From positions 124,001-188,000 of IMG/VR virus record IMGVR_UViG_3300030419_008158: DNA of 64,000 nt. One strand, written 5' to 3'. Positions 1,310 through 38,719 of the stretch are shown here, piece after piece. The notes beneath the pieces were generated by a model, which was not told the DNA's origin, did not search any database, and saw nothing but the letters and a program-made list of their open reading frames with translations. How positions within the stretch are numbered: position 1 is the stretch's first letter; every line of letters begins with the position of its first letter. The translations under genes were made by a program, and so were the position numbers.

Positions 1310-2482
1310 CTATAGGTGTTTTCTCACGATACTCTCAAACTTTTCTTGTAATGCTTCCAAAGAGTGAGATTTGATTAGTTTTTCAGAAAGATTTTTCGCA
1401 TGAGCGCTAAACTGATTGGGTTTTTCATACACAGCTTTCATTTTTCTGCAAAAGTTTCCCTCTCTTGGATTTGCCCAAGCTGATCCGGCTACAAATATTT
1501 TTCCGTCAATTCTAGCAGGAGGTACAGGGCACATATCAAACTTTACTTTCTGAAAACTGGCGCCTTCCAAAAACTCTGTATGGGCAGACCAGTCTGTTGC
1601 AACAACTGGAAGTCCAGAAACTGCTGCCTCAAGCAGGGGCAAACCAAACCCTTCCCCACGAGTTGCAGACATATATCCTATAAGTTTCTGACTCTTGTAA
1701 ACATTTTTCATTTCCTCTCGAGTCATTGTGCCGTGCATCATATAGAGTTTTGGTGCTCTGTCTAAATTCACACTTGAAGAAGCCCTCACCTGTCTTAAAG
1801 TTTTTCTGACCAACTCTCTGTCTATTGTAGTGTCTCTTCCTCTAGATGTCTTTACAATCAACCCTACATCTTTTTTCCCTTCAAACGCCTTCAAAAACCA
1901 AAGAATACTCGATAATAAATTTTTTCTATCTGCATCAGGATTATCGCTAGTTAGAGTGCCTACTGTTAGAAAGTTTTTGTCTGTCGGTATGTCTTCTAAA
2001 GGGTCGCTGGATGGCTCCAAAAGAAGCTCACTGAAGTATGCTTCCGGAAGTACTTCTATGGGCGTTTTATTTTGTGAGCCTCCAGTCCTTTCTAGCGTTT
2101 GTTTAGTAAAGTCGCTAGGAACAATCACAAGATTCATTTTTTCTCTTTGCTTGACAGCCCAATCTTGTGAACATTTAGTTGTCTCAACACCTGCTGTAAC
2201 TCCAACATTGTAGTTGGCTAAAGTTTCATCCCACTCATGAGGAAGTTGGACTTGAAATGAAATATCAAATTTTTGTGTAGTCGGTCTAGATGCTGACATT
2301 ATTCTGCCGTATAAGCCGTCCTCATCGGTATCACTCACATTCCAGGGAGTAATTCCCCACGGAAGTATTTGTGTTGTAATATTCCAGCCTTTTTGTGCTT
2401 CACAAAATCTAAAAATTTGTCTAGAGTGAACCCCATAGCCGGATTGTGATAAAAGAGGTGCTCTTACTAAAACATTTTTCAT
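1310..2482 (-). CDS. GT-B glycosyltransferase (GT4-like)
   Basis: EGFGLPLLEAAVSGLPVVATDWSAHTEF motif. Confidence 0.85.
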   Translation of the reverse strand: MKNVLVRAPLLSQSGYGVHSRQIFRFCEAQKGWNITTQILPWGITPWNVSDTDEDGLYGRIMSASRPTTQKFDISFQVQLPHEWDETLANYNVGVTAGVETTKCSQDWAVKQREKMNLVIVPSDFTKQTLERTGGSQNKTPIEVLPEAYFSELLLEPSSDPLEDIPTDKNFLTVGTLTSDNPDADRKNLLSSILWFLKAFEGKKDVGLIVKTSRGRDTTIDRELVRKTLRQVRASSSVNLDRAPKLYMMHGTMTREEMKNVYKSQKLIGYMSATRGEGFGLPLLEAAVSGLPVVATDWSAHTEFLEGASFQKVKFDMCPVPPARIDGKIFVAGSAWANPREGNFCRKMKAVYEKPNQFSAHAKNLSEKLIKSHSLEALQEKFESIVRKHL

Positions 2483-3720
2483 GAAATTTCCTCGATAACA
2501 AATTTTTGATCTGTTTTGTAATTTTCAGTCAAATTCCACAGTGAATCATGCCACAAGTCTATCGTTTTCTGCAAAGAAAACTCCGACTGGACATAATCTC
2601 TTGCTTTCTGGCCCAGTGCTTTCCTTTCGCTTTTACTCATTTTGTACATCTTGTAAATTGATTCAGCGATAGTGTCAGTGCTTACATAGTCTTCGTAGAT
2701 ATAAGGGACCATTTGTGAACCTACCAAAGATTGCATTTCTACGTCAAGTGCAATTCCATTCTCTGTTCCATCTCTATGATCAACTACTTGACGAGTCAGA
2801 CCACCTGTTTTTACAGCAATTACAGGATTGGCCACCTTCATAGATTCCAGAGTTGCTAATCCAAACCCTTCTGCGTATGCTATGTTAATACAGCAGTCAG
2901 AAATATTATGCAGAATATTCATTCTATCAAATTCAACTCTTTGATTTGAAAAGACAACGCTGTCAACAACGTTCATGGCTTCAACATTCACTAGCAGATT
3001 TGGACCTTCTTGATCAACCGGATCTGTGTGCATAAGAAGCGTCGCATCTGATTTTCCTTCTTTTTCTAACATTTTCACAAACTTGGCCCATGCTTCAATT
3101 AAATCAGCCGGTCTTTTTCGACGAGCATTTCTATTGACCCAAAAAAGAACAAAGTGATCCTGTCTATGCGGTCCTAAAATTTGTATTTTGTTTGTTTTAA
3201 TCTGGTCTTCTGTCATAGGAAAAAATAAATCGTCCGGCAGTGCATGAGGTACAAAATTAGCTTTTCCCGGAACAATCTCATTTACCATTTCATACGAAAG
3301 ATAGCTGTGACAATTTATAAGATCAGTTGCCTCATAGAGGACTTTGTTGTAATAGGGTGCAGGTCGATTGTCCCACACATGCCAATAAGCAATTGGGCAA
3401 ATTTTATTGATCTCATCATGCATTTCCCAGACGTAAATAAAAAACCTAGGGTCTGTGAAAAGAAAAATCACATCAGGTTTTTCTGCGGCTATCGCCTGCA
3501 AAAGCATTTCTCTGTCGCCAAAACCATCTATGGGCTTGATCATAAAGTCCGGATTAACTTGAACAACATCATAATTGTTGTGCTTCATTGCAGCACCGAA
3601 CTGTCGAACTGACCAGCAGCCCTTATCGATTAGCCCGTTTATTAGAAAACGACTTTGACATCCGACCCCCGAAGTGCTGAGTGCGTGGTCGGAGAGCATT
3701 AGTATCTTTTTTTTCTTCAC
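2479..3720 (-). CDS. GT-B glycosyltransferase (GT4-like)
   Basis: EGFGLATLESMKVANPVIAVKTGG motif; GTG start; 4-nt overlap with the next gene. Confidence 0.85.
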   Translation of the reverse strand: MKKKKILMLSDHALSTSGVGCQSRFLINGLIDKGCWSVRQFGAAMKHNNYDVVQVNPDFMIKPIDGFGDREMLLQAIAAEKPDVIFLFTDPRFFIYVWEMHDEINKICPIAYWHVWDNRPAPYYNKVLYEATDLINCHSYLSYEMVNEIVPGKANFVPHALPDDLFFPMTEDQIKTNKIQILGPHRQDHFVLFWVNRNARRKRPADLIEAWAKFVKMLEKEGKSDATLLMHTDPVDQEGPNLLVNVEAMNVVDSVVFSNQRVEFDRMNILHNISDCCINIAYAEGFGLATLESMKVANPVIAVKTGGLTRQVVDHRDGTENGIALDVEMQSLVGSQMVPYIYEDYVSTDTIAESIYKMYKMSKSERKALGQKARDYVQSEFSLQKTIDLWHDSLWNLTENYKTDQKFVIEEIS

Positions 3721-3797
3721 ATCACACCAATTTTTTTAAAGCTTGTTGCTTATATTAGTGTGATGAAGACACTAGTAAATTCGAATTGAATAATTAT

Positions 3798-4664
3798 CTA
3801 CGTGCAATGCTCTGTCTGGGCGAATTCGCAAAACTTACAAGAAGATCTATTTTTTATCATAAATCCGGTCCTCATACCCTTCAACATACCGCTAACCATT
3901 TTGTTTGCTTTTGATATTGACTTCGGACCTGATGATACTTCGACAATATCTACTGACTTGCCCGGCTTGCTGTCACGCTTGAGAAGAACAAAGCATGCTT
4001 TTACTTGACTACTAGGTTTTCCTGACACTTGCATCCAGTAGTGTTTGTACAGCACAATTTGTGCCTGTGTCAAAAAATCTCTCTTTTTATCTTTTCTCCA
4101 ACCTCGAGGGCCCGCTGTCTTCCAATCAATAACTACGTGCTTTCCACTTGGAAGCTCAAGAACGCAGTCAATGAAGCCCTTGTAGAATCCAATTTCGTCA
4201 CCCGACACAGCCTCATATAGATTGTGCTCAGCAGCAACAGGTTTCCATCCAGGAAACTTTTCATCCAAAAATGATGGTAACTGTTCTAGACTGTTCTTCG
4301 ATGACTCTAGCCACCCTTCTAGATTCACGTGCCTATACTTCCACCCTTGCCCTGCAGCTCGAGATGTCTGCTCTTTTATAAATTTTTCAGAATCGAACCC
4401 ATGTTTACTCCACGCCTCTCTAATTTTATTGTGGGCCGTCGGAATATCCATAGGATTACCGTTTAGAAAATTTTCAACAGCATCATGTACAATGGTCCCG
4501 TATTCCAAGTACGGAGAAGGGACCACTTCCGAAAGGCCGTCGATGTACATCAACTTGTGACGAAAAGGACACTGCTGGTATATGCTTACTTCTGAGTATG
4601 ACACATGGGGTTTGCCATTCTTCAGAAGGGCAGTTTTTGTCTCAAGTTTTTTATAGTCTTCCAT
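3798..4664 (-). CDS. PD-(D/E)xK nuclease, RecB/AddB/Cas4-like, with 4-Cys cluster
   Basis: SYSE...QQCP at the N-terminus, KGFIDCV...VIDWKT catalytic motifs, C-terminal CKFC...C. Confidence 0.85.
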   Translation of the reverse strand: MEDYKKLETKTALLKNGKPHVSYSEVSIYQQCPFRHKLMYIDGLSEVVPSPYLEYGTIVHDAVENFLNGNPMDIPTAHNKIREAWSKHGFDSEKFIKEQTSRAAGQGWKYRHVNLEGWLESSKNSLEQLPSFLDEKFPGWKPVAAEHNLYEAVSGDEIGFYKGFIDCVLELPSGKHVVIDWKTAGPRGWRKDKKRDFLTQAQIVLYKHYWMQVSGKPSSQVKACFVLLKRDSKPGKSVDIVEVSSGPKSISKANKMVSGMLKGMRTGFMIKNRSSCKFCEFAQTEHCT

Positions 4665-5563
4665 GTATTAATTGTATCACTTTTTTGTACATTTTTACAT
4701 TTTTTCATAAATGATCGAACGTACTTCTTAAGCGACTTCTTTGCATGCCAGCCAGTTTCTTCTTTCATAAACTCCGGCTCTGCCAAAGTAATTCTTACTT
4801 CACCAGGTCGAGCAGGAATTCTGGTTTTGAGACCTCCAAACATGTTTGCCAACTCATTTATAGAATAGTTTGTGCCGGTACCTAAACTAAAAATAGGTGT
4901 TGCGTCAAATTTTGTCCAGTCTTTTATTCCAAGTTCGTATAAACCCCTGACAATGTCATCGACATGTGTAAAGTCTCGTCGTTGTTCTCCATCTCCGACG
5001 ATGGTTAGTGGTTTTTCTTTTTTTGTAAGTTCTTCAAACTTACCAACAACAGTTGCCCAAGGCCCTGTGATTGGCTGCCTAGGACCGTAAACATTGAAAA
5101 ACCTAGCAATGGCTGTGCTCATTCCATAGACTTCGTGATACATTTCACATACTCTTTCACCAGATCTTTTTGCGAAAGCATATGGATTTAAGTACTCATC
5201 TCCAAATGCAGTACTTGATCCTGCATAAACAAATCTCGCACCCACCCTTCTTGAATAATCACATGCAGCTGCAGTTCCCATAATGTCATTGGACAAATAA
5301 TCCAGCGGGTGTTCAAAAGAGGGTTGAATTCTAGCGTGTGCCGCCAAGTGAAACACAATGTCAAATTTTTCTTTTGAGTACTTTGATTTATCTAGATTTC
5401 TAACGTCATCGATCCAGTATGTAGAGTTTTCATTGCTATAACTTCTAGATGATGATTCTGAGCATAGGTTGTCCATTACAGTTACTGTACATCCCTCCCT
5501 TACTAACAAATCAACTAGATTGCTTCCTACAAATCCCAAACCACCTGTAACTAGTACTCTCAT
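4622..5563 (-). CDS. NAD-dependent epimerase/dehydratase (extended SDR)
   Basis: GGLGFVGS Rossmann motif, YAFAK (YxxxK), RFFNVYGP, GDGEQRRDF. Confidence 0.9.
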   Translation of the reverse strand: MRVLVTGGLGFVGSNLVDLLVREGCTVTVMDNLCSESSSRSYSNENSTYWIDDVRNLDKSKYSKEKFDIVFHLAAHARIQPSFEHPLDYLSNDIMGTAAACDYSRRVGARFVYAGSSTAFGDEYLNPYAFAKRSGERVCEMYHEVYGMSTAIARFFNVYGPRQPITGPWATVVGKFEELTKKEKPLTIVGDGEQRRDFTHVDDIVRGLYELGIKDWTKFDATPIFSLGTGTNYSINELANMFGGLKTRIPARPGEVRITLAEPEFMKEETGWHAKKSLKKYVRSFMKKCKNVQKSDTINTWKTIKNLRQKLPF

Positions 5564-5578
5564 TTGACACCTTCGAAA

Positions 5579-6550
5579 CTATAATTCTTTTTTTGTCAAA
5601 TCATAATCAGACTCATACATGATTTGAACTAAGTCATGAAATGTTGTTTTTGGTTCCCAAGAAAGCTTATTTTTTGCCTTTGACGAATCACCCAAAAGAT
5701 AAGGTACTTCGTGTGGTCGAAAAAACCTAGGATCAATCTCCACATGATCTTCTACGTTTAGTCCTGCAATTTCAAAAGTATAGTCTAAAAATTCTTTTAC
5801 TGACCTTGTCTCCCCTGTTGAAATCACATAATCATCCGGAATGTCTTGCTGCAGCATCAGCCACATGGCTTCTACGTAGTCTCCAGCGAAACCCCAATCT
5901 CTTTTTGCTGATAGATTGCCTAGGTAGAGCTTGTCTTGAAGGCCCAGCTTAATTTTTGCTGCAGCTCTTGTAATTTTTCTAGTGACAAAAGTTTCACCTC
6001 TACGAGGAGATTCGTGATTAAAAAGAATACCGCTTGAAGCATGAAGATCGTAACTCTCTCTATAGTTTCTGACTAGATTGTGTGCAAAAAGCTTTGCACA
6101 AGCGTACGGAGATGCAGGAAGCATTCTAGATTCTTCATTGAAAGGATAGTCTGGATTGTCACCATACATTTCAGAAGAAGAAGCTTGGTAGAATTTGCAG
6201 TCTGGCATTATGTTTCTTATCGCATCCAAAATTCTCAATGTACCCATTGCAATTCCGTCGACGGTGTTTTCCGGGATGTCGAAAGAAACGCGAACATGAG
6301 ATTGTGCAGCCAAATTATAAAACTCATCGGGCAAATAGTCGTTAAGAAGACGATAAATACATCCAGCATCGTTCAGATCAAAGTAAACAAGATGAAAGTT
6401 AGGATTTTCATAAATTTTATCAACTCGGTCTGTCGTAATAAGTGATGTCCTTCTCTTTGCTCCTACAACTTGGTATCCCTTGTCTAGTAAAAGTTCTGCT
6501 AAATAGGATCCGTCTTGCCCAGTAACTCCTGTAATTAATGCAGTCTTCAA
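5579..6550 (-). CDS. gmd: GDP-mannose 4,6-dehydratase
   Basis: [49 protein letters not shown]. Start moved to TTG 6550 (GAGG SD, overlap with the fcl stop). Confidence 0.95.
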
Positions 6551-7485
6551 TTTACACCTCTGACATTTGGATAGTTCATTATAAACCAATCACACGTCTT
6601 TTTTATTCCTTTTTCCAAAGGAGTATAGTCAGATTTTTTCCACCCTAAACTAAGAAGTTTTCTATTTGAACTGGGTTTTCTATGTTGCCCTAAGGGCTCA
6701 GATGTTTGCCACTCAATTTTTCCTTCATACTTCAGAGTTTTACAAATTATTTCCACGACCTCTTTGATTGAATACTCGTGGGTATTCCCTATGTTTATAG
6801 GTTCTGGCTCATTGTAGTTTTCCATCAAAAATAAAAGAATTTGTGCAACATCCTCAGAGTATGTGAATTCTCGAAGAGGAGATCCATCCCCCCAACACAG
6901 AACTTTCTCCTGCTTGTTGATTTTTGCTTCCCACACCTTTCTAATGATAGCCGGAATTACATGACTGTTCTCTAGATCAAAATTATCATATTCTCCGTAC
7001 AAGTTATTGGGTATTGCGGTTATAAAGTTGCATCCGTACTGTTGACGATATGCTCTTGACATGACATCAACCATTCTTTTTGAATACGCATAGCCATAAT
7101 TTGAGTTATGGGGTGGGCCTAAGTGAAGCTGGTCTTCTGTAAGCGGATAAGAAATATACTGCGCGTCTGGGTAGACACACGTAGAGAGAAGAGAGACAAC
7201 TTTTTCAACATTTTGAGAATGAGCAAAATTTAGAATTTTTTGGTTGATAATGCTATTTTCTAAATAAAAATCTAGCATGTAAGAAGTATTAGCTTTGATA
7301 CCTCCGACACGTGCTGCCAGATGAATTATATTTTTCCCAGAAACATCTTCTGGTTCAAGATTTTCAAAATCTTTGCGGTTCAAGTAAGTCGCACTTGGTA
7401 AAAATTTTTGAAATGCTGACCCCACCATTCCGGATCCGCCAGTAATCAGCATGTCTTTTTTTGTGTTCGTCTGTCTAGACTTCAT
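6547..7485 (-). CDS. fcl: GDP-L-fucose synthase
   Basis: [46 protein letters not shown]; adjacent to gmd. Confidence 0.9.
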
Positions 7486-8084: not shown

Positions 8085-8095
8085 TTTTTCTCACC

Positions 8096-9849: not shown

Positions 9850-9850
9850 T

Positions 9851-11428: not shown

Positions 11429-11454
11429 AAATTACACCTATCGTGAGATAAACC

Positions 11455-20162: not shown

Positions 20163-20187
20163 GTTTTTCTATCAATTCTCACCCTCG

Positions 20188-23436: not shown

Positions 23437-23437
23437 T

Positions 23438-26016: not shown

Positions 26017-26078
26017 TTACTTCACCTCTTCTCTATAATAGAGATACTAATACATAAAGTACAAAAGTAAATGAACTT
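26009..26078 (-). promoter_or_regulatory. 14-bp perfect inverted repeat covering the start codon of the first glycan gene
   Basis: aagttcatttactt (26009-26022) and aagtaaatgaactt (26065-26078) are exact reverse complements; ATG at 26016; SD GAGGTG at 26023-26028. Confidence 0.55.
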
Positions 26079-26237
26079 TCTTATAGATGATTCTTTAAGA
26101 AAATAATCTCTATAGAGATAGAAGATATCTTAAGAATCTCAGTCTCTTTCCCCGAGTCCAGGTTCATTTAAAGAATAGAAGCATTTCTATAAATGTTCAA
26201 AAAAAAATAATTATTTTCTAGAAATGATGAAAATTAC

Positions 26238-27683: not shown

Positions 27684-27697
27684 TTAGCCCTCCCAGA

Positions 27698-30955: not shown

Positions 30956-30970
30956 TTTATCTCTCCAATG

Positions 30971-33900
30971 TTATTCATTTTCGTCTAGCGGTATGAGTGC
31001 CATTTTGAATTTTTTCCCTGTAAGGTTGTTGACTACGCAAAGATAATCAGCTTCCTCAACTATTGTCCAGTCTCCCCTATCATTCCTCAAGTGGAGGTCT
31101 CCAGTGTAAATATTACCGAATCGTCGACTTGGTGCACCTAAATTCGATCCTAAATCTGCACCCGGTAATATTGTTCCGCTAGCAACGACATCGCCACCAA
31201 ATAATGATGTACCTCTTGTGGACGTTGATGCAGAAGAAGTCGATCCTGACACATAGAATGCTACATCAGATCCTACTGCTTCGTTAGTAGAGGAAGCCGC
31301 TCCTCCAGAAAGGATGAGAACTTGGTCTGTTGAACCATCAACCAAAAGAGCGTTTGCTTTAAGTCTAGACTCAACTCTAAAATCTGTTGCTGCACCAATT
31401 TCATTCACTACCACACCTGAGCTGGAAATATCAAGTGCGCTTCCATAGCGATTATTGATCAACATTCGTGAATTAGGACTTCCGCCTCCAAACCAGCTAA
31501 CTCTATCAGTTGTATGGTCTACTGATAATGCCAAAGGATCGCTATTAGTTGCCAAGTAAAATCCACCGGAGACGTATAAATCACCCCCAAAGACTGATGT
31601 CCCTCTATTAGCAGATCCAGCATTATCTGCTGTACCTGAAACGTAGAAGTTGACGTCAGCTCCAGCTGCTTCATTATAAGATGTTGCCCCTCCACCCGAC
31701 AGTATCAGAACCTGGTCTGATGATCCGTCAACTAAGAGAGCGTTTTCTTTAAGGTTAGACTCAACTCTAAAGTCGACACTAGCTCCTTGCTCGTTGAAAA
31801 CAGCAGCACCGTTAGATGCAAAGAATATGTCAGCATCTCCCGGAGTTGCCGAAGTTGTTCCAATAGTAAGCGAACCAGAAGTTGCAATAACTTGATTTGC
31901 AGGTCCGCTCCACCCTACCGCATCTGCGACCCCTCCTCCAGATGAAGCTATCGTCACAGCTCCGGAGGATCCGGTTGTTATGGTTACATTCGAACCAGCA
32001 ATAAGATAGGATGTGCCGTCACTTAGGTGGGTGAGAGATCCCGAAAGAGCTGGAGCAGTAACAGCTCCGGAAAATGTAGATCCAGTAAGAGTTGCGATTA
32101 CCGTATTGTCAACTGCCAGCTCTGTTGAATCTATTTTCAGCCCGCCGCCAGACTTCAGATCAGTGCTAAATGTAGTCCCACTTAGATCTAGACCATCACC
32201 AGCAGTGTACTCCGTGTTAGTGTCTGCTGAGGTGATCGTCACAGCTCCAGATGATCCGGTTGTTATTGTAACATTAGATCCGGCAATCAGGTATGAAGTT
32301 CCGTCTGAAAGCTTAGTTAGTGATCCTGAAACGGCGGCACTGGTGACTGTAGAAGCGTGAACAGTGCTGGCATAAACAGATCCTGAAGAGTATAGATCGC
32401 CTCCAAAAACTGCTGTTCCTTTTGTTGATGTACCTCGAGAACCGATTGCGCCTGAAACAAAGAAGGCAATATCTGCGGCGTTCTTCGGTTGCATTGCTCC
32501 CTCATGAAGCCCTGAACCTGACAGGAATATAATTTGTCTATTTAGAGAACCCCAGTGAGAACCTATTCGGAACATCTCCTCAGGGGCTGATCCGTTGTGA
32601 GTCTTGAAAACTAAGTCGTTGCTGCTGCTTATGTGCATTATGGCGCCGGTGCTACCCTCAGAGCCTATAAATGCTACTGTCGAATCATTTGAGTTACTTT
32701 CTCTCTGTAGTGAAAGCGTTGGAGCTGACTCCTTCAAGTGAAGCAAAGAAGAAGGTGAATTTGTACCAATACCTACCCTGTCTGAACTTCCTTGAACATA
32801 TAGAGTATTGTCATCTCCATCGGTTCTAACTTGGAAGTCAACATCTCCACCATCTCCGATTTTTACGATATCCTGACCGGCCTCAGATACTGTAATAAGT
32901 TGTTCACCACCTGCAGTAATCCCAATAGAATCTTCAGCAAATTGTATGAATGTATTGGAGTCAGTATCGCCACTGTGGTAGATGTACTCGCTTACATGTA
33001 TATCTTGTCCATGCAGTGTACCTGAAATAACGACATCACCACCAAATACCGCGGCCCCTCTAGTAGAAGTACCTCGTGATCCAACTGTACCTGAAACGTA
33101 GAAGTTGACGTCATCGCCGGTTGCCTCATTGTAAGATGTTGCTCCTCCACCCGAAAGTATTAGGACCTGATCGGTAGAGGCATCAACCTTTATGGCATTA
33201 GCTCCGGACCCACCGCTAGAATTGACAACAAAATCTACATTTGCAAAATCACCATTGACGATTAGTTGACCACTGTTATCACTTCCCTCCGAAACGGTAA
33301 TGACAGCATTTCCGCTGTCTTCCTGAATTTCTAAAGAACCTCCCCCAGCACCTCCAGTTTGAAGAGCTTTTAGAATTACACTTTTGTCACCCGATTTTGA
33401 AATACTAAGAACGTCGTCAAGATGTATAGTTCCCGATGATAATAGATCGCCTCCAAAAACAGCAGTCCCCGCTGTGGAAGAATCTTTAGAACCTATTGTT
33501 CCGGAAACAAAGAAGAACGCGTCAGACCCAACCGAATCTGCAGTATAAGTCATCCCTTTTCCGCCGGCAACTGAAAGTGATGCTGTCGTAACAAACTCTG
33601 CGGGAGAAGGAACGTTAAAGCTACCTGATGTTACAGTGCCACCAGTTGAAGCAATTGTAAGAGCTCCACCGGCACCAGCATCACTTAGAGAAATACCAGA
33701 CCCAGCTGTAAGAACTCTTTCATTATTTAGCGAACCTGTGGCTGAAAGAACAATGTATGTTGCACTTGGGTCACCTGATCCACCCCCAGATCCAGCAGCT
33801 GCATTAATAGTCACAGCACCCGACGATCCAGTAGAAATCGTAATGTTATCGCCGGCGATTAGATATGGTGTGCCGTCTGTCAACTGTGTAAGAGATCCAC

Positions 33901-36900
33901 TTATACCATCATCTGCTCTAATCTGTCCCTTGAAGTGTGTTCCGCCGGTGGCACCGGTCATGAACAGTGTACCGGGGGTGTTTAGTGATATTGATCTATT
34001 TGCTACACCACCGCTACCTGTTAGCCACATTGCGCCGGCTGCACCATCATCTAAGTCTAAAAAGTCTATTTGCCCAATGCTGGAACCCAGCTTCAGAGAA
34101 GAGCTGGCAAATACTTTTACAGGACCGTGTGGATTTCGAACGATAGCATCGTCACCAGAAGGAGGCTTCAGCTCCATTGTGCCGGTTACTTCCAAACCGC
34201 CGTCAATTTTGAGAGGTGATCCGCCGTGGAGAGTTCCTGATATTACAACATCTCCACCGAATACAGCGACACCTCCTCCGGATCCGTCCTTAGACCCTAT
34301 GGTTCCCGATACAAAGAATGATGTGTCTGTAAAATGTTTGGGATCTACACTAGTGGGCGCGCCGCCAGAAAGTATATAAACCTGGCCCCCGTGTGATGCA
34401 GATGTCATCAAAAAGTTTCGATTGGCCCCGCCAAAACCACTTCCGTAGGTTGGCATAGCCATCTCTGTCACCAAAAATGAAGCAGGACTTTTAGCTAGAG
34501 ATCCGGTCCCTAGACCTATCATTATTGATCCTGCGCCTCTATTTTGAATGTTTACAGAATTAGCACCACCCACAGCCGGCAAAGTATCTTTCGAGCGTAA
34601 ATTGATATGGAAGTAAGCATTACTGTCATCATTATCATTTATAAATTTAATGCCGCGATAATCGGAGGTTGACTGTGCTGAATTGTCTATGAAAAGCGTC
34701 CCGCTGGATAATAAGTCACCTCCAACTACAGTCGTTCCTCTAGCATTTGATGTACCCTTCCAGTCTATTGCGCCTGATATAAAAGTCGAAATATCGGCGC
34801 CCATAGAGGACGGTATGCTACCGCCTTGAATTATGTTGACATCTGCTCTGTGTGCCAGGTGTGTACCCTCTATGACTGAACTGACTCCGCCGTAAAGTGT
34901 TCCAGAAATAACAACATCGCCCCCAAAAGCACTCACGGCTGCTGAGTCTATTACATCTTTTTTCCCTTTTGAACCACTGACAAAGAAATAAAGATCTGAT
35001 CCTTCATGATTTGCAGTGTGTGTAAATCCTTCACCACCCGCTAGTGAAAGGGATGCCGTTGTTACAAACTCTCCCTGCCCAGGAACGTTAAAGGATCCGG
35101 TTGTAACTGTGCCGCCTCCTCCTCCGCTTCCAACTTCAACTTCACCGCTTTCGTTCTTGAAATATAGCTTTGTTACACCGGAGTCGTCTTTACCGTAAAG
35201 CACAACAGCACCATCAGGTATTGTACCTGGTGCGGAAATCTCTTCAAGATACATGGCGCCAGAGACAACAACATCACCACCAAATAATGAAACATTGTGA
35301 TCATCTCCTCCTTTGCCTCCCACGGCGCCTGAGACAAAGAAGTTGACATCCATGTATTCTGATTCGTTAGGAGAATTTATGCCACCTCCTGATAGAATTA
35401 ATACCTGATCCCACCTGTTGTATTGTGAGCTCGGGCCTCCCAAATATATGATGTCACTGTGATCACCCTCTGACTCTGACAAAACAAGTCCGGCCTTGCC
35501 TCCAGCCTCTATGCTGATTTTATCATCAGAAAAATGAATTTTTGTGTTTGAGTCCCCAATTCTACTGACAGTGTTTTGGACTTCTATGCCGTTACCGTTT
35601 GTTATTCTAACTTTCTCACTGCCGTCCACATTGAATAGAATGTAGCCAGTTCCGCTGTTGTCACCAAAATGCATATTGGTGTCATCTGCCAAAGAACTAG
35701 TAATAGCTGTTACATGAAGGGCAGTTTCTGCATAAAGCGCGCCGGAGACAACAGTATCGCCTCCAAAAACTGCTGTTTTGCCAGTTGCCTCTCCCTTTTG
35801 ACCAACTGACCCGCTAACAAAGAAAAACGCATCTGCTCCGGATGCGTCTGCTGTATGACTGAAACCAAGACCACCAGCAACTGATAGAGATGCAGTGGTC
35901 ACAAACTCTCCCGGTGATGGAACGTTAAAGCTACCTGTCGTGCTACTTCCACCGCCACCGCCACTACCTATTGGATTTCCGTTCCCATCATACAGGGTTC
36001 CGCTAACAACAACATCTCCACCAAAGACCGCAGTCCCTCTATCTGTAGCAGAATTTTTTGACCCCCTAGATCCAGAAATATAAAAGTTGGTATCATCGCC
36101 TGTTGAAGCGGATCTTCCATTTCTGTTCTGGAACCTTAGTTGATCAGCAGTAAAATCAAGTACTGTTTTACTGCCTGATTCTTGTGTTCCCCAAATAGAG
36201 CCAGAAATAACAACGTCACCACCAAAGACCGCGACTCCCGTGCTATCTTTGCCCCCAGAAGTTCCTGATACGTGAAAGAATGTGTCACCACCAGGTGAAA
36301 GCTCGCCAGAAGAGTCTGATGTTTGAAACTGAATATAGTTGTGTTGTCCGCTGACCTTTATAATTCCTGCGGAGTCTTTTGAGTTTACAACAAAATCTTG
36401 CAGTGATCCGTCAGCAGAATCTGTGGGAGGTGTTCCGACAACCATTGCACCGCTGACCATTACATCGCCACCGAAAATCGATGTACCCCTAGTTGATGTA
36501 TTTCTAGATCCCATAGACCCGGATACCCATACATGAGCATCTAGGCCCAATCCGGTTGCACCGGCAGTTTCACCAATAGCAGCTGCAGCAACTCCGGAAT
36601 TTGATCCCAAAGCATAGAGCGTGCCACTTATGACTGTGTCGCCGCCGAATAGCGATGTAACATGTGAATCTGTATGTTTAGCGCCGGCGCTTCCAGAAAC
36701 AAAAAATGCTACATCTTCTCCACTTGACTGATCAGCAGAATGCCCACTACCACCGGAAAGAATTAGAACCTGCTCGTTCCCTGATTGTGCGATTCCCTTG
36801 ATCAACTGTTTACCCAGAGCATCTGCATAAACAATAAAATCAACATCATTTGCGTTGTTGTTTATGTTGATAGACTTTTGACCAGAATCTCCATCTAATT

Positions 36901-38041
36901 GTATAACTACAGTCCCATCAGCTTGTATTTTTACATCATTATCTTGAAAATCAATTCTTGTGTTAGAATCAGATAAGTGAGAAACATACTGTGAAACTAT
37001 TAGTTCACCTCGAACTGTGAGGTCATCGCCAACGTCTAGATCATCTGTAATGGTGAGATCATCAGTATAAAGTGCGCCGGAAACTACGACGTCACCCCCG
37101 AAGACCGCAGTCCCTTTTGTGGAGGATCCCTTGGAGCCTTGCGATCCAGAAACATAGAATGCAACATCAGATTGAGCGGCTTCGTTAAAAGATGTAGCTC
37201 CGCCACCAGACAGGACTAAGACTTGATCAAATTTATATGGATTGCCTGAACCTAGCCCGTAGCTCCCTAGCCATACTTTTTGATTCGGACCATCGGCAGA
37301 AAGAGCTGTAAGTGACTCTGCGTCTAAGAAAAATTGACCATCTGCAGGAAATGCTATTTGTGTAGTCAGATCTCCGATGTGTCTGACGCTTCTAGCAATA
37401 TCGATTGAAGCCGCCCCTGCCCCGTAAACCTCCAAGACACCGCTTGTTACAACATCACCACCAAAAACTGATGTTCCTCTAGTTGATGTTCCTTTAGAGC
37501 CTACAGCCCCAGAAACATAGAATGCAACATCATTTTGGGAACCTTCATCAAAAGATGTAGCTCCGCCGCCCGATAGAATTAAAACCTGGTCTTTGCTAGC
37601 ATCAACAAAAAGTGCATGTGTTTTATTTTCTGACTCGACCCTAAGATCATTTTCTGGATCTCCCTCGCCCGATTCATTGACAATTAGTCCTTCATGAATC
37701 GTGGCACTCTGAGAAACAATAAGTGATCCGGATACAGAAAGAGATCCTGTGGCGCTAAGATCAACCTCGACGACCTGTCTTTCCGCATACATTGTACCAG
37801 AAATGACTACGTCTCCACCAAAAAGCGTGACATCTGTTCGTGTGTTTTTACTTCCTGTCACAAACATAAAAACGTCTGTGCCGACATTTGCGAGAAGTGC
37901 AGAGTTGCTTAGAGCTTCTCCCTCATAGCCAGAAGAATCAGATGCACTAACAACCAGAATGCTGGGCTTTCCAGATTCAGATCCGGATCCGATTATTTGT
38001 GTAAGCCTGACCTGACTAGCTCTAAAATCTTTAGTTGCCAT
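30971..38041 (-). CDS. Giant tail-fibre-like protein (2356 aa)
   Basis: About 17 copies of D..F.VSG..G.K.....G..(V/L)FGGD..(V/S)SG; YTAGDGLDLSG fibre motif; C-terminal NIYTGDLHLRNDRGDWTIVEE domain. Confidence 0.8.
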   Translation of the reverse strand: MATKDFRASQVRLTQIIGSGSESGKPSILVVSASDSSGYEGEALSNSALLANVGTDVFMFVTGSKNTRTDVTLFGGDVVISGTMYAERQVVEVDLSATGSLSVSGSLIVSQSATIHEGLIVNESGEGDPENDLRVESENKTHALFVDASKDQVLILSGGGATSFDEGSQNDVAFYVSGAVGSKGTSTRGTSVFGGDVVTSGVLEVYGAGAASIDIARSVRHIGDLTTQIAFPADGQFFLDAESLTALSADGPNQKVWLGSYGLGSGNPYKFDQVLVLSGGGATSFNEAAQSDVAFYVSGSQGSKGSSTKGTAVFGGDVVVSGALYTDDLTITDDLDVGDDLTVRGELIVSQYVSHLSDSNTRIDFQDNDVKIQADGTVVIQLDGDSGQKSININNNANDVDFIVYADALGKQLIKGIAQSGNEQVLILSGGSGHSADQSSGEDVAFFVSGSAGAKHTDSHVTSLFGGDTVISGTLYALGSNSGVAAAAIGETAGATGLGLDAHVWVSGSMGSRNTSTRGTSIFGGDVMVSGAMVVGTPPTDSADGSLQDFVVNSKDSAGIIKVSGQHNYIQFQTSDSSGELSPGGDTFFHVSGTSGGKDSTGVAVFGGDVVISGSIWGTQESGSKTVLDFTADQLRFQNRNGRSASTGDDTNFYISGSRGSKNSATDRGTAVFGGDVVVSGTLYDGNGNPIGSGGGGGSSTTGSFNVPSPGEFVTTASLSVAGGLGFSHTADASGADAFFFVSGSVGQKGEATGKTAVFGGDTVVSGALYAETALHVTAITSSLADDTNMHFGDNSGTGYILFNVDGSEKVRITNGNGIEVQNTVSRIGDSNTKIHFSDDKISIEAGGKAGLVLSESEGDHSDIIYLGGPSSQYNRWDQVLILSGGGINSPNESEYMDVNFFVSGAVGGKGGDDHNVSLFGGDVVVSGAMYLEEISAPGTIPDGAVVLYGKDDSGVTKLYFKNESGEVEVGSGGGGGTVTTGSFNVPGQGEFVTTASLSLAGGEGFTHTANHEGSDLYFFVSGSKGKKDVIDSAAVSAFGGDVVISGTLYGGVSSVIEGTHLAHRADVNIIQGGSIPSSMGADISTFISGAIDWKGTSNARGTTVVGGDLLSSGTLFIDNSAQSTSDYRGIKFINDNDDSNAYFHINLRSKDTLPAVGGANSVNIQNRGAGSIMIGLGTGSLAKSPASFLVTEMAMPTYGSGFGGANRNFLMTSASHGGQVYILSGGAPTSVDPKHFTDTSFFVSGTIGSKDGSGGGVAVFGGDVVISGTLHGGSPLKIDGGLEVTGTMELKPPSGDDAIVRNPHGPVKVFASSSLKLGSSIGQIDFLDLDDGAAGAMWLTGSGGVANRSISLNTPGTLFMTGATGGTHFKGQIRADDGISGSLTQLTDGTPYLIAGDNITISTGSSGAVTINAAAGSGGGSGDPSATYIVLSATGSLNNERVLTAGSGISLSDAGAGGALTIASTGGTVTSGSFNVPSPAEFVTTASLSVAGGKGMTYTADSVGSDAFFFVSGTIGSKDSSTAGTAVFGGDLLSSGTIHLDDVLSISKSGDKSVILKALQTGGAGGGSLEIQEDSGNAVITVSEGSDNSGQLIVNGDFANVDFVVNSSGGSGANAIKVDASTDQVLILSGGGATSYNEATGDDVNFYVSGTVGSRGTSTRGAAVFGGDVVISGTLHGQDIHVSEYIYHSGDTDSNTFIQFAEDSIGITAGGEQLITVSEAGQDIVKIGDGGDVDFQVRTDGDDNTLYVQGSSDRVGIGTNSPSSLLHLKESAPTLSLQRESNSNDSTVAFIGSEGSTGAIMHISSSNDLVFKTHNGSAPEEMFRIGSHWGSLNRQIIFLSGSGLHEGAMQPKNAADIAFFVSGAIGSRGTSTKGTAVFGGDLYSSGSVYASTVHASTVTSAAVSGSLTKLSDGTSYLIAGSNVTITTGSSGAVTITSADTNTEYTAGDGLDLSGTTFSTDLKSGGGLKIDSTELAVDNTVIATLTGSTFSGAVTAPALSGSLTHLSDGTSYLIAGSNVTITTGSSGAVTIASSGGGVADAVGWSGPANQVIATSGSLTIGTTSATPGDADIFFASNGAAVFNEQGASVDFRVESNLKENALLVDGSSDQVLILSGGGATSYNEAAGADVNFYVSGTADNAGSANRGTSVFGGDLYVSGGFYLATNSDPLALSVDHTTDRVSWFGGGSPNSRMLINNRYGSALDISSSGVVVNEIGAATDFRVESRLKANALLVDGSTDQVLILSGGAASSTNEAVGSDVAFYVSGSTSSASTSTRGTSLFGGDVVASGTILPGADLGSNLGAPSRRFGNIYTGDLHLRNDRGDWTIVEEADYLCVVNNLTGKKFKMALIPLDENE

Positions 38042-38363: not shown

Positions 38364-38364
38364 C

Positions 38365-38703: not shown

Positions 38704-38719
38704 TGCACACCTCTGCGAC

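What the first reader, a model, noticed from the sequence alone, without database searches (positions are those of the whole stretch)
1310..38041. A 25-kb glycan island directly downstream of Ser/Thr-rich fibres: possible virion glycosylation
Seen: about 27 co-oriented, tightly coupled genes with about 10 glycosyltransferases of both folds, immediately after fibres very rich in Ser/Thr/Gly. No flippase, polymerase or initiating Und-P transferase is in the window. Inference: the lack of export machinery favours cytoplasmic glycosylation of phage proteins over a host O-antigen or capsule pathway. Virion glycans can shield against antibodies or proteases, or aid adhesion. DNA glycosylation is a further alternative.
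Basis: partly seen in the sequence, partly recalled or inferred. Interest (0 to 1): 0.62.

Follow-up and report, generated by a model that had tools for sequence, protein, structure and literature searches.

The report
Swappable sugar-gene cassette in jumbo phage
A 284-kb marine phage carries a 25-kb block of sugar-building genes with no membrane-export parts, made of a few conserved enzymes around a cassette that is exchanged wholesale between related phages; it may coat the phage's own proteins with a strain-specific glycan, but what receives the sugar is still unproven.

Summary
Window 1310-26016 (minus strand) has 27 tightly packed genes, with largest gap 77 nt. They encode about ten glycosyltransferase domains of both folds, a GDP-fucose pathway, an RfaE-type sugar-activation module and carbamoyl/methyl tailoring enzymes. 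Three large Gly/Ser/Thr-rich fibre genes (26238-38041) lie just upstream. The whole 284-kb genome lacks a flippase, a polymerase and an initiating transferase.

New points:
- The host genome is a distant T4-like marine jumbo phage.
- The island is a clade-wide locus. Conserved genes (a 631-aa GT-B+GT2 fusion, a PD-(D/E)XK nuclease and two GT4s) bracket a cassette of 0 to about 25 kb that is swapped between close relatives.
- Fibres and cassette vary independently.
- The fibres have a late-type promoter. The island has its own conserved sigma-70-like promoters.
- DNA glycosylation is unlikely. No hydroxymethylase or DpdA was found, and DNA of a cultured relative with the same conserved genes has no glycosylated nucleoside.

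Glycosylation of phage proteins is the leading reading (about 0.4). Remodelling of host envelope glycans through host export machinery is nearly as likely (about 0.33). Missing export genes do not separate the two.

The parts
24121..26016 (-). Conserved 5' anchor of the island: a 631-aa two-domain glycosyltransferase. The N half is GT-B-like (about residues 23-300), followed by a GT-A/GT2 domain (about 314-500) with DGGSxDGT and DxDE motifs, then a helical C-terminal region.
   Evidence: Pfam GT2. AlphaFold model with pLDDT 91.4. Top Foldseek hits are SunS/ThuS peptide glycosyltransferases, RmlT/TarS/TarP and polypeptide GalNAc-transferases. 80+ IMG/VR relatives and 2885 clusters in metagenomes. 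Virus-only clusters in the ESM Atlas. Invariant motif residues in a 24-sequence alignment.
20188..24124 (-). Glycosyltransferase block of the variable cassette: GT2 (23438-24124), GT11 fucosyltransferase-like (22669-23469), GT6 (21947-22708), GT4-N-domain protein (20991-21950) and HtrL/YibB (20188-20994).
   Evidence: Pfam and NCBIfam. The same five genes in the same order occur in L032/L033/L057 at 44-63% identity and in L190 at 77-89%.
18302..20162 (-). Kinase-like protein (19365-20162, APH/Bud32-like) plus an NTP_transf_3+HAD fusion (18302-19375). This is a probable 'kinase then nucleotidyltransferase' activation pair for a sugar or phospho-substituent.
   Evidence: Weak Pfam/NCBIfam hits. 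The pair recurs together in G004 and as a single fused 535-aa gene in L192. The function is inferred.
12447..18305 (-). RfaE-type sugar-activation module:
- SDR epimerase (17286-18305)
- unknown phrog_13607 protein (16522-17289)
- RpiB + RfaE-domain-II nucleotidyltransferase fusion (15640-16521)
- RfaE-domain-I-like PfkB kinase (14847-15668)
- AraD-like class II aldolase/epimerase (14174-14857)
- cupin (13771-14211)
- TalC/FSA (13112-13774)
- HAD phosphatase (12447-13127)

The likely product is an NDP-heptose or another rare NDP-sugar.
   Evidence: Pfam and NCBIfam. The fusion, kinase, AraD, TalC, cupin and HAD genes co-occur again in two unrelated contigs, L097 and L098, and in parts of phage loci. 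The product is inferred, not shown.
7482..12450 (-). Tailoring block: GT-like protein (11455-12450), NodU-type O-carbamoyltransferase (9851-11428), unknown 230-aa protein (9157-9849), radical SAM enzyme (8096-9202) and SAM methyltransferase (7482-8084).
   Evidence: Pfam and NCBIfam NodU. The same order occurs in Tara scaffolds L186 and L187.
4622..7485 (-). GDP-6-deoxyhexose genes: GDP-L-fucose-synthase-like SDR (6547-7485), GDP-mannose 4,6-dehydratase (5579-6589) and a further SDR (4622-5563).
   Evidence: GMD scores 458 bits, above the NCBIfam equivalog cut-off of 415. Fcl is the top hit for 6547-7485 at 245 bits, below its cut-off. Pfam.
1310..4664 (-). Conserved 3' anchor: PD-(D/E)XK nuclease (3798-4664), GT4 of 413 aa (2479-3720) and GT4 of 390 aa (1310-2482). 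Both GT4s keep the E-x7-E motif.
   Evidence: Pfam and sequence. The trio is conserved in IMG/VR relatives, in Flavobacterium phage immuto and Microcystis phage Mel-JY01 and in Tara scaffolds. 3602 clusters of the 413-aa GT occur in metagenomes.
26017..26237 (-). 221-nt spacer between the fibres and the island. It holds a T-run and two sigma-70-like promoters: TTGAAC-17-TATTCT at 26172-26200 and TTGTAC-18-TATTAT at 26035-26064.
   Evidence: Sequence. Both elements are conserved in relatives L190 and L191, and mostly in L192, at 70-86% protein identity. They are the only intergenic matches of this pattern on the coding strand of the genome. Function is inferred.
26238..38041 (-). Three fibre-type genes: 481 aa (26238-27683), 1085 aa (27698-30955) and 2356 aa (30971-38041). 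The largest has 15 'FxVSG - S/T-rich loop - FGGD' modules and a C-terminal End_tail_spike-like domain.
   Evidence: Composition and repeats. Pfam End_tail_spike at 30 bits. The C-terminal 70 aa match a virion structural protein of Synechococcus phage ACG-2014j. An orthologous fibre in L192 carries Peptidase_S74. There is no PHROG or PDB relative, so 'fibre' is an inference.
38049..38727 (-). Two small genes (38049-38363 and 38365-38703) that head the fibre operon. They are preceded by the late-type promoter motif GATATTTAG at 38719-38727.
   Evidence: The motif GATAYTTA has 21 of its 28 coding-strand copies in the 5.2% of the genome that is non-coding. It lies 0-37 nt before the portal, baseplate and large structural genes. 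It is conserved at orthologous sites in L186-L188 and L192.
278..1309 (-). Conserved genes just after the island, probably not glycan genes: a 95-aa protein (1022-1309) and a gp55-like late sigma factor (278-1021).
   Evidence: phrog_234 'late sigma transcription factor', E 1.3e-5. Weak Pfam Sigma70_r2. Conserved after the GT4 pair in relatives.

Best explanation
What it is (high confidence, about 0.9). The island is a phage-autonomous glycan-assembly locus made only of soluble enzymes, in a marine T4-like jumbo phage of 284 kb. It has a 'conserved frame plus swappable cassette' design that is shared by thousands of uncultured aquatic phages.
- The frame consists of a 631-aa GT-B+GT2 fusion at one end and a PD-(D/E)XK nuclease plus two GT4s at the other.
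- Between them sits a cassette of 0 to about 25 kb. In this phage it is 19.5 kb with 23 genes.
- Here the cassette supplies GDP-L-fucose (GMD plus an Fcl-like SDR).
- It also supplies a rare NDP-sugar made by an RfaE-type kinase / phosphatase / nucleotidyltransferase route, possibly a heptose.
- A second kinase / nucleotidyltransferase pair probably activates another sugar or substituent.
- Five or six further transferases are present, including a GT11+GT6 pair of the kind that builds fucosylated blood-group-like epitopes.
- Carbamoyl and methyl tailoring enzymes complete the set.

How it most likely works (inferred, about 0.4). The conserved transferases start a short core glycan in the cytoplasm on a phage-encoded protein acceptor, either the fibres or another virion protein. 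The cassette enzymes then extend it into a lineage-specific outer glycan. Each phage lineage would thus carry its own 'glycotype' on the particle, as in chloroviruses, mimiviruses and some mycobacteriophages. The sugar genes are read from their own sigma-70-like promoters, so pools and enzymes would be in place before the late structural proteins appear.
For: Gene content and tight packing.

No membrane steps anywhere:
- None in this genome.
- Only 1 polytopic protein among 797 ORFs downstream of the 631-aa anchor gene in 77 related loci.
- None in five further full cassettes.

Frame and cassette architecture:
- Cassette length is 0 kb in L009, 3.5 kb in L064, and 11-25 kb in G001-G005.
- 203 of 317 cassette protein clusters are private to one locus group.
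- The cassette is the same at 86-90% frame identity (L190, L187). It is wholly replaced at 81% (L188/L189).

A phage-intrinsic acceptor is suggested by several points:
- The 413-aa frame GT4 (with a PD-(D/E)XK gene close by) is shared with phages of Flavobacterium and Microcystis, and the GT4 with a Rhodothermus phage. These are the same phages that rank nearest by major capsid protein.
- The 631-aa GT family is virus-only in the ESM Atlas, and its feature neighbours include GT1+GT2 fusions of giant viruses.
- Its GT-A domain is closest in fold to the peptide glycosyltransferases SunS/ThuS.
- In this subclade the island lies inside the structural region, between late-promoter-driven fibres and baseplate genes.

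Precedents: clade-specific glycan clusters for the virion fibrils of giant viruses (PMC10117803), and glycans on the capsid and tail tube of mycobacteriophages (as cited in PMC12619734).
Against: - No glycan has been shown on any protein of this clade.
- Fibre adjacency is not conserved across the clade.
- Fibres and cassette vary independently. A pairwise co-variation test was weak and confounded.
- The island lacks the late-type promoter and has sigma-70-like promoters instead. That fits an early or middle function at least as well.
- Gly/Ser/Thr richness is ordinary for fibres.
- Heptose-type pathways, HtrL, and GT11/GT6 pairs are classic LPS and O-antigen genes.
- Fold matches of GT-A domains are generic. 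WTA and polysaccharide enzymes score nearly as well as SunS.
Confidence: 0.4

Rival explanations
1. Remodelling of the host's envelope glycan. The soluble phage transferases would build a new oligosaccharide on a host lipid-linked acceptor, either Und-PP-sugar or lipid A-core at the inner face of the membrane. The host's own Wzx, ABC transporter or MsbA/Lpt and ligase would then export it. This would change the infected cell's surface, for example to block superinfection or to keep progeny from sticking to debris.
For: - The gene content is that of LPS/O-antigen loci: an RfaE-like heptose-type module, HtrL/YibB, GT11+GT6, GDP-fucose genes and NodU-type carbamoylation.
- A faint GT9 hit occurs in a relative's cassette.
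- O-antigen and core transferases are normally peripheral proteins without membrane helices, and LOS-type synthesis needs no phage flippase or polymerase. The missing export genes are therefore not evidence against this reading.
- The island has its own sigma-70-like promoters rather than the late motif.
- The cassette is hypervariable like host surface-glycan islands.
- This is the standing proposal for similar gene sets in large cyanomyoviruses (PMC12801897).
Against: - The frame transferases are conserved across phages whose hosts belong to different phyla with different envelopes.
- The 631-aa family is virus-only.
- Not one flippase, polymerase, ligase or initiating transferase turned up in about 700 kb of related cassette sequence. 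The exception is one unclassified 12-segment membrane protein. Bacterial loci nearly always carry such genes.
- Building a whole new 8-10-sugar glycan is far more than known phage serotype conversion needs. Known conversion uses membrane GtrABC-type or acetylase genes, which are absent here.
Confidence: 0.33
2. DNA glycosylation. The transferases, with the neighbouring PD-(D/E)XK nuclease, would decorate modified bases of the phage genome to evade restriction, as T4 and its relatives do on 5-hydroxymethylcytosine.
For: - A nuclease gene is conserved next to the GT4 pair.
- In immuto and Mel-JY01 the module lies among replication genes.
- The 390-aa GT4 touches the Pfam 'GT4-conflict' model at 27.3 bits.
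- Phage transferases that put diverse glycans on DNA are known (cited in PMC12619734).
Against: - There is no thymidylate-synthase-family hydroxymethylase, no DpdA/TGT and no C5-methylase in the genome. A Tet/JBP search found nothing, but its control was silent.
- DNA of the cultured relative immuto, which has the same frame genes, gave only dA, dC, dT and formyl-preQ1 deoxynucleoside by LC-UV-MS, with no glycosylated nucleoside (bioRxiv 10.1101/2023.04.13.536721).
- Ten transferase domains with fucose, carbamoyl and methyl tailoring far exceed any known DNA glycan.
Confidence: 0.04
3. Another soluble target. The glycan would be put on non-virion proteins of phage or host, for example to mask proteins from defence sensors or to disable host factors. 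Alternatively it would be made as a free or secreted glycoconjugate. A further possibility is that the nucleotide-sugar genes mainly redirect host carbon flow.
For: - All enzymes are soluble.
- Expression signals are separate from the structural genes.
- There are weak hits to conflict-system families: GT4-conflict and TCAD9.
- One sibling strain appears to have lost part of the cassette (L186: split carbamoyltransferase, and the GMD region replaced by short ORFs). This suggests that parts are dispensable.
Against: - There is no positive evidence for any such target.
- A pure metabolic role does not explain ten transferase domains.
- The conflict-family hits are at or below threshold.
Confidence: 0.15

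Closest known systems
Clade-specific glycosylation gene clusters of giant viruses (Megavirinae fibrils; chlorovirus capsid glycans)
   Same: Both are virus-encoded nucleotide-sugar pathways combined with soluble, often multi-domain transferases and methyltransferases. Both are clustered, differ between clades and have no membrane export steps (PMC10117803 and PMC9614988). GT1+GT2 fusions of Nucleocytoviricota are feature neighbours of the 631-aa protein.
   Different: This is a tailed phage of bacteria, not a eukaryotic virus. No glycan has been demonstrated on its particles. The fixed-frame, swap-in-cassette layout and the scale of exchange between close relatives are not described for those viruses, as far as I could read.
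Mycobacteriophage virion O-glycosylation (Freeman et al. 2023, as cited in PMC12619734)
   Same: Phage-encoded transferases that act in the cytoplasm on the phage's own structural proteins.
   Different: By my own recollection (the paper was not held), those systems have a few transferase genes at the end of the structural operon and no sugar-nucleotide pathways. Here there are 27 genes with their own promoters, and the host is Gram-negative-type.
'LPS / cell-wall' gene sets of large cyanomyoviruses (P-SSM2, S-SCSM1, S-SCSM2R)
   Same: Large aquatic T4-like phages that carry 13-24 transferase, epimerase and GDP-sugar genes, including GT11. The function is unresolved and usually ascribed to host surface change (PMC12801897).
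   Different: It is a different phage lineage: the capsid protein is only about 33% identical. The 631-aa anchor gene has no match in 50,697 GenBank phage records. The conserved-frame architecture is not reported there.
'Moraphages', aquatic jumbo phages of 200-307 kb (PMC12619734)
   Same: Genome size, aquatic origin, a capsid protein near that of Rhodothermus phage, and four core orthologous groups annotated as glycosyltransferases whose role was left open.
   Different: Membership could not be tested because their sequences are not in my tools. This phage is marine, whereas most moraphages are freshwater. The paper does not describe the cassette, its frame or its link to fibres.
Bacterial O-antigen / capsule loci and flagellin glycosylation islands
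   Same: A hypervariable glycan cassette between conserved flanks, with the same enzyme families. Flagellin islands likewise lack lipid-carrier and export genes and act on Ser/Thr of a surface filament protein in the cytoplasm (my own knowledge).
   Different: There is no Wzx, Wzy, Wzm or initiating transferase, and no Maf/PseI-type genes were seen. The locus is carried by a lytic-type phage.

Membership tests
Wzx/Wzy-dependent O-antigen or capsule locus | Initiating polyprenyl-phosphate sugar transferase (WbaP/PglC Bac_transf type, or WecA type) | tested here: not met
   PF02397 is absent from the whole genome, with the control ringing in 9 of 14 genomes. No protein has enough membrane segments for a WecA type.
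Wzx/Wzy-dependent O-antigen or capsule locus | Wzx flippase and Wzy polymerase (10-14 membrane helices) | tested here: not met
   A hydropathy scan of all 350 ORFs finds none with 6 or more segments. None occurs in five further full cassettes. Only 1 of 797 ORFs in related loci is polytopic, and it is unclassified.
Wzx/Wzy-dependent O-antigen or capsule locus | Clustered nucleotide-sugar genes and glycosyltransferases, variable between strains | tested here: met
ABC-transporter-dependent polysaccharide locus | Wzm permease (6 helices) with a Wzt ATPase | tested here: not met
   No polytopic protein is present. Wzt alone was not searched for.
Phage serotype-conversion modules (gtrABC type) | GtrA small flippase, membrane-bound GtrB and polytopic GtrC | tested here: not met
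   The small membrane proteins of the genome are MgtC, DUF5658, a weak HlyIII-like hit and DUF4229-like. None lies in the island.
Phage DNA glycosylation (T4-type, on hydroxymethyl bases) | Enzyme that makes the hydroxymethyl or other handle (dCMP/dUMP hydroxymethylase, Tet/JBP with C5-methylase, or DpdA) | tested here: not met
   PF00303 absent. PF01702 absent. PF00145 absent. PF12851 absent, but its control was silent, so that one is inconclusive.
Phage DNA glycosylation (T4-type, on hydroxymethyl bases) | Glycosylated nucleosides in virion DNA | not testable with these tools
   Indirect only: the relative immuto, which has the same frame genes, shows dA, dC, dT and fdPreQ1 and no glycosylated nucleoside.
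Virus-autonomous protein glycosylation (chlorovirus / mimivirus / mycobacteriophage kind) | Virus-encoded soluble transferases, without use of membrane-bound or lipid-linked steps | tested here: met
Virus-autonomous protein glycosylation (chlorovirus / mimivirus / mycobacteriophage kind) | Virus-encoded synthesis of the donor sugars | tested here: met
   GMD is above its equivalog cut-off. An Fcl-like SDR and an RfaE-type module are also present.
Virus-autonomous protein glycosylation (chlorovirus / mimivirus / mycobacteriophage kind) | Glycan covalently attached to virion proteins | not testable with these tools
   No proteomic or staining data exist for this clade. No RNA run holds the phage.
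Virus-autonomous protein glycosylation (chlorovirus / mimivirus / mycobacteriophage kind) | Glycan genes co-vary with, or are co-expressed with, the acceptor protein | tested here: inconclusive
   The fibres have a late-type promoter and the island does not. The same cassette occurs with different fibres in L036 and L039. The partial correlation was 0.12 on non-independent pairs.
Moraphage lineage (PMC12619734) | Jumbo genome of 200-307 kb from aquatic samples, with several core glycosyltransferase groups | tested here: met
   284,429 bp. Marine metagenomes. Three conserved GT genes with four GT domains.
Moraphage lineage (PMC12619734) | Placement inside the clade in TerL, MCP and PolB trees | not testable with these tools
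   The reference genomes are not available here. The capsid protein's nearest GenBank relatives are LR756508, Mel-JY01, immuto and RM378. That is compatible with membership but is not a test.
T4-like (Tevenvirinae-related) myoviruses | gp23-type capsid, gp20-type portal, gp6-type baseplate wedge and gp55-type late sigma | tested here: met
   phrog_138, phrog_213 and phrog_219. phrog_234. Identities to cultured T4-like phages are only about 33-48%.

The most novel reading that the evidence does not exclude
The island would be a virion 'serotype locus'. A conserved set of phage transferases would lay a core glycan on tail fibres or capsid. Interchangeable cassettes would then give each lineage of a very abundant group of aquatic jumbo phages its own O-antigen-like coat. 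That coat would evolve by cassette swapping, independently of the fibre genes next to it. This would be the largest protein-glycosylation system known in a phage and the first in phages of Gram-negative aquatic bacteria.
Probability: 0.35. Interest if true: 0.85.

Novelty: new variant of a known kind. Interest (0 to 1): 0.6.

Why it matters
Sugar-gene sets in large aquatic phages have been noted for twenty years without a tested function. This analysis gives the question a concrete shape.
- There is a fixed frame of three conserved transferase genes.
- Between them lies a cassette that is exchanged wholesale between phages that are still 81% identical in the frame genes.
- No membrane step appears anywhere in the related cassette sequence examined.
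- Thousands of relatives exist in ocean and lake metagenomes.
- Cultured relatives that carry the frame exist (Flavobacterium phage immuto, Microcystis phage Mel-JY01), so the function can be tested at the bench.

If the glycan sits on the particle, phages have 'glycotypes' that mirror the surface-glycan diversity of their hosts. That would bear on adsorption, on particle decay and grazing in the sea, and on phage engineering. If it instead sits on the host, this would be large-scale surface rewriting by a lytic phage that borrows the host's export machinery. That would be equally new in scale.

Tried and rejected
- **Megablast:** searches of the island and of the neighbouring 24 kb against GenBank phages found nothing. 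A tblastn of the 631-aa anchor also found nothing there.
- **Promoter scans:** generic sigma-70 and terminator scans gave counts equal to shuffled sequence. The Bacteroidota -7 motif TAnnTTTG is barely enriched between genes (13 of 165 copies against 5.2% non-coding), so I draw no host inference from it.
- **Late motif in distant relatives:** a search for the late motif upstream of the anchor gene in 60 distant relatives was uninformative, because each lineage may use its own motif.
- **Fibres:** they have no PHROG family and no sequence relative in the PDB.
- **GtfA/GtfB idea:** I considered that the two frame GT4s form a GtfA/GtfB-like pair with one inactive partner. Both keep E-x7-E, and the Gtf1 hits are only E 0.03-0.04 over 40 residues, so I dropped the idea and ran no complex prediction.
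- **The 12-segment membrane protein of L066:** it has no Pfam family and only unnamed bacterial look-alikes. It remains unresolved.
- **Co-variation of fibres and cassette:** the pairwise test was weak, the pairs are not independent, and many loci have an inverted upstream region.
- **Expression data:** no RNA run holds the phage. The runs that could be laid are contigs, which show presence only.
- **Missing records:** the Tara scaffolds behind L186-L188 could not be searched as whole records. The Freeman et al. paper is not held, and no paper on Mel-JY01 is held.
- **Not run:** the large representative-protein search, because it carries no names or context.

Full report
**1. What the window is**

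The window is bases 124001-188000 of a single 284,429-bp IMG/VR virus record rated 100% complete. The genome has 41.7% G+C, and almost all of its roughly 350 ORFs lie on the minus strand.

Hallmark genes outside the window show a distant T4-like myovirus:
- A gp23-type capsid protein (626 aa), a gp20-type portal and a gp6-type baseplate wedge.
- A gp55-type late sigma factor inside the window at 278-1021.

The capsid protein is nearest to an uncultured 484-kb phage (LR756508), Microcystis phage Mel-JY01, Flavobacterium phage immuto and Rhodothermus phage RM378, at 38-48% identity. It is only about 33% identical to cyanomyoviruses.

The DNA comes from marine metagenomes. Identical pieces occur in two runs of another study, so the phage is a real, recurrent population.

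Size, habitat and conserved transferases fit the recently named 'moraphages' (PMC12619734). That paper reports four core glycosyltransferase groups and leaves their role open. I could not test membership by phylogeny.

**2. The observation**

It is confirmed. From 26016 down to 1310 there are 27 minus-strand ORFs. Only two spacers exceed 40 nt: 77 nt before the GT4 pair and 221 nt before the first gene.

Pfam and NCBIfam give the following, in order of transcription:

| Window coordinates | Call |
|---|---|
| 24121-26016 | 631-aa protein with a GT2 domain |
| 23438-24124 | GT2 |
| 22669-23469 | GT11 |
| 21947-22708 | GT6 |
| 20991-21950 | GT4-N-domain protein |
| 20188-20994 | HtrL/YibB |
| 19365-20162 | kinase-like protein |
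| 18302-19375 | NTP-transferase+HAD fusion |
| 17286-18305 | SDR epimerase |
| 16522-17289 | unknown protein (phrog_13607) |
| 15640-16521 | RpiB fused to an RfaE-domain-II nucleotidyltransferase |
| 14847-15668 | RfaE-domain-I-like kinase |
| 14174-14857 | AraD-like class II aldolase/epimerase |
| 13771-14211 | cupin |
| 13112-13774 | TalC/FSA |
| 12447-13127 | HAD phosphatase |
| 11455-12450 | weak GT-like protein |
| 9851-11428 | NodU-type carbamoyltransferase |
| 9157-9849 | unknown protein |
| 8096-9202 | radical SAM enzyme |
| 7482-8084 | methyltransferase |
| 6547-7485 | Fcl-like SDR |
| 5579-6589 | GDP-mannose 4,6-dehydratase (458 bits, above the equivalog cut-off) |
| 4622-5563 | another SDR |
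| 3798-4664 | PD-(D/E)XK nuclease |
| 2479-3720 and 1310-2482 | two GT4s |

The three ORFs upstream (481, 1085 and 2356 aa) have Gly 16-17% and Ser+Thr 18-23%, against genome means of 7% and 14%.

They are fibre-like by several indirect signs:
- 15 tandem 'FxVSG - S/T-rich loop - FGGD' modules.
- A weak End_tail_spike hit.
- A C-terminus shared with a cyanophage virion protein.
- A Peptidase_S74 domain in an orthologous fibre.

They have no PHROG or PDB relative. Their composition is not unusual among this phage's structural proteins.

**3. No export machinery anywhere**

- A hydropathy scan of every ORF in the genome finds no protein with six or more hydrophobic segments.
- The few small membrane proteins are MgtC, DUF5658 and the like.
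- Bac_transf is absent.
- Among 797 ORFs downstream of the anchor gene in 77 related loci (about 700 kb), one is polytopic, and it is unclassified.
- Five further complete cassettes have none.

**4. The island is a clade-wide locus with a fixed frame and a swappable cassette**

The 631-aa protein has 80+ relatives in IMG/VR at 46-61% identity, many on contigs of 100-324 kb. It has 2885 clusters in metagenome proteins. The 413-aa GT4 has 3602 clusters.

Mapping the window's proteins on these loci shows two conserved anchors. One is the 631-aa gene. The other is the run PD-(D/E)XK, GT4, GT4, 95-aa gene, late sigma.

The distance between the anchors varies widely:
- 0 kb in L009.
- 3.5 kb in L064.
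- About 11, 18, 20, 24 and 25 kb in five near-complete genomes.
- 19.5 kb in this phage.

In a more distant group the anchors sit together and the variable genes follow (L065-L081).

Of 317 protein clusters in the variable part, 203 are private to a single dereplicated locus group. Common families that are absent from this window include other GT-B and GT2 enzymes, DegT aminotransferases, methyltransferases and UDP-glucose dehydrogenase.

Close relatives show the tempo of exchange:
- A contig with 86% identity in the anchor (L190) has the same cassette at 73-92% identity, with one extra gene.
- Tara scaffolds with 90% identity in the GT4 (L187) share the 3' half. A sibling (L186) has a split carbamoyltransferase and short ORFs in place of the GMD region.
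- A scaffold with 81% identity in the GT4 and the same baseplate flank (L188) has an entirely different cassette, with formyltransferase, DegT, WbqC and UDP-glucose dehydrogenase.

The island is also lower in G+C (34-40%) than the fibres (42-47%).

**5. The conserved transferases**

An AlphaFold model of the 631-aa protein from a 24-sequence alignment has pLDDT 91.4. It shows three parts:
- A two-Rossmann, GT-B-like N half.
- A GT-A domain with invariant DGGSxDGT and DxDE motifs.
- A helical C-terminal part.

Foldseek ranks the peptide S-/O-glycosyltransferases SunS and ThuS first. Wall-teichoic-acid transferases, polypeptide GalNAc-transferases and polysaccharide synthases follow at nearby E-values. 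This is a lead, not a discriminator.

In the ESM Atlas the family's clusters are 96-100% viral. Lower-scoring feature neighbours include GT1+GT2 fusions of giant viruses.

Both GT4s keep the E-x7-E motif. The 413-aa GT4 matches sucrose-phosphate-synthase-like enzymes, BshA and the chlorovirus protein B736L at E 1e-4 to 5e-6.

The same GT4, with a PD-(D/E)XK nuclease gene close by (an IMP-dehydrogenase gene lies between them in Mel-JY01), is present in immuto and Mel-JY01, and the GT4 alone matches in RM378. In immuto and Mel-JY01 the module is again followed by variable sugar genes. There, however, it sits beside replication or lysis genes, not fibres.

**6. Sugar pathways (inferred)**

- GMD plus the Fcl-like SDR give GDP-L-fucose for the GT11 enzyme. 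A GT6 next to it is the pairing that builds blood-group-like epitopes in bacteria (my own knowledge).
- The kinase, HAD phosphatase and nucleotidyltransferase are the RfaE/GmhB logic for turning a sugar phosphate into an NDP-sugar. TalC, the AraD-like enzyme, RpiB and the cupin would make the sugar phosphate. The product may be a heptose, but this is not shown.
- The six genes travel together. The same set recurs around the only two full-length matches of the RpiB-nucleotidyltransferase fusion among 185,579 species genomes. Both matches are on contigs binned to a CPR bacterium and a DPANN archaeon.

**7. Expression signals**

The motif GATAYTTA(G) has 21 of its 28 coding-strand copies in the 5.2% of the genome that is non-coding. 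It lies 0-37 nt before the portal, baseplate and large structural genes. It is conserved at orthologous sites in relatives. With the gp55-like sigma, it is best read as the late promoter.

In the window it precedes the two small genes that head the fibre operon (38719-38727). It does not occur inside the island.

The 221-nt spacer before the anchor gene contains a T-run and two sigma-70-like promoters: TTGAAC-17-TATTCT and TTGTAC-18-TATTAT. Both are conserved in L190 and L191, and the first also in L192; the second has only its -10 box there. They are the only intergenic matches of that pattern on the coding strand.

The island therefore probably has its own host-sigma-dependent transcription, possibly with read-through from the fibres. 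This is inference from sequence. No RNA data exist.

**8. Which acceptor?**

*DNA* is unlikely.
- There is no hydroxymethylase, DpdA or C5-methylase.
- Published LC-UV-MS of immuto DNA shows dA, dC, dT and fdPreQ1 only.

*A phage-intrinsic protein acceptor* is favoured by four points:
- The frame transferases are conserved across phages of three host phyla.
- The anchor family is restricted to viruses.
- Membrane steps are absent throughout the clade.
- Giant viruses and mycobacteriophages provide precedents.

*Against the fibres as the acceptor* there are three points:
- Adjacency holds only in one subclade.
- L036 and L039 share a cassette at 71-88% identity, while the adjacent fibre aligns at 42% over a third of its length.
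- The promoter classes differ.

*Host envelope remodelling* remains a strong rival.
- The enzyme families are those of LPS and O-antigen synthesis.
- Such transferases are normally peripheral proteins.
- Synthesis on lipid A-core needs no phage-encoded flippase, polymerase or initiator.

I put phage-protein glycosylation at about 0.40, host glycan remodelling at about 0.33, another soluble target at about 0.15 and DNA at about 0.04.

**9. Novelty**

Sugar-gene sets in large aquatic phages are known, as are conserved transferases in moraphages. I did not find the following described in the literature I could read:
- The frame-and-cassette architecture.
- The cassette's turnover between close relatives.
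- The clade-wide lack of membrane steps.
- The independence of cassette and fibre variation.
- The separate promoter classes.

I rate the finding a new variant of a known kind. It is of moderate to high interest because it makes the long-open question directly testable in cultured relatives.

Noticed in passing
window 42866-47321 (-): A PrkA/YeaG-like serine kinase (650 aa), a YeaH-like protein (433 aa) and a SpoVR-like protein (390 aa) lie in a row. This stress-response trio is also found in Thermus phages, Ralstonia phage RsoM2USA, Enterobacter phage LAU1 and 600-kb uncultured phages at 29-35% identity. It is conserved at 52-65% identity in three related IMG/VR loci, L023, L024 and L030.
   Followed up: partly
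window 38719-38727, 53591-53597, 54867-54873, 56383-56389 (-); genome-wide: Candidate late promoter GATAYTTA(G). 21 of its 28 coding-strand copies are intergenic, 0-37 nt before structural genes. It is conserved at orthologous sites in relatives and paired with a gp55-like sigma at 278-1021.
   Followed up: yes
genome 231895-248474 (outside the window; loci L091, L092): The phage encodes a tmRNA (tag ANDNVEYDYALAA) and eight tRNAs. By my recollection, a tag that begins ANDN and ends YALAA looks proteobacterial rather than Bacteroidota-like. TATAAT is about 5-fold enriched between genes, while the Bacteroidota -7 motif is not. The host may therefore not be a flavobacterium.
   Followed up: no
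L097 1807-9553; L098 8001-12338: The RpiB-nucleotidyltransferase fusion occurs with its kinase, AraD-like, TalC and HAD or cupin partners on contigs binned to Candidatus Taylorbacteria and a Woesearchaeota MAG, at 54-55% identity. These may be mis-binned viral contigs, or a shared rare sugar pathway.
   Followed up: partly
L186 2231-3843 and 7174-9077: In one Tara scaffold with an identical 413-aa GT4, the carbamoyltransferase is split into 156- and 369-aa ORFs. The GMD/SDR region is replaced by four short ORFs without Pfam hits. The sibling scaffold L187 is intact. This could be decay of part of the cassette or an assembly error.
   Followed up: no
L066 16649-18274: This is the only polytopic membrane protein (541 aa, 12 hydrophobic segments) found in any related cassette. 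It has no Pfam family, and its look-alikes are unnamed bacterial proteins.
   Followed up: partly
window 56406-58499 (-): A 697-aa protein with four MopE-type putative metal-binding repeats sits among genes preceded by the late motif.
   Followed up: no
window 50528-51316 (+): One of the few plus-strand genes. It encodes a trypsin-like peptidase domain protein.
   Followed up: no
genome 76443-78323 (locus L086 443-2323): The major capsid protein is 626 aa. It aligns to relatives in two pieces covering 58-74%, which implies a Gly/Ala/Ser/Thr-rich insertion of about 200 aa (roughly residues 120-350). This would be a possible exposed acceptor surface.
   Followed up: no
window 26086-26130 and 26028-26050 (-): The inverted repeat TCTCTA...TAGAGA occurs twice in the spacer before the anchor gene, once overlapping the second promoter's -10 region. 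It is kept in L190 and may be an operator.
   Followed up: no
genome 206889-207563 (locus L090 889-1563): An MgtC-family membrane protein with an ACT domain is encoded by the phage.
   Followed up: no
window 38743-40044 (-): A PhoH-like protein with a PIN-type N-terminal region in relatives. It is conserved next to the fibre/island region in 55 of 80 related loci.
   Followed up: partly
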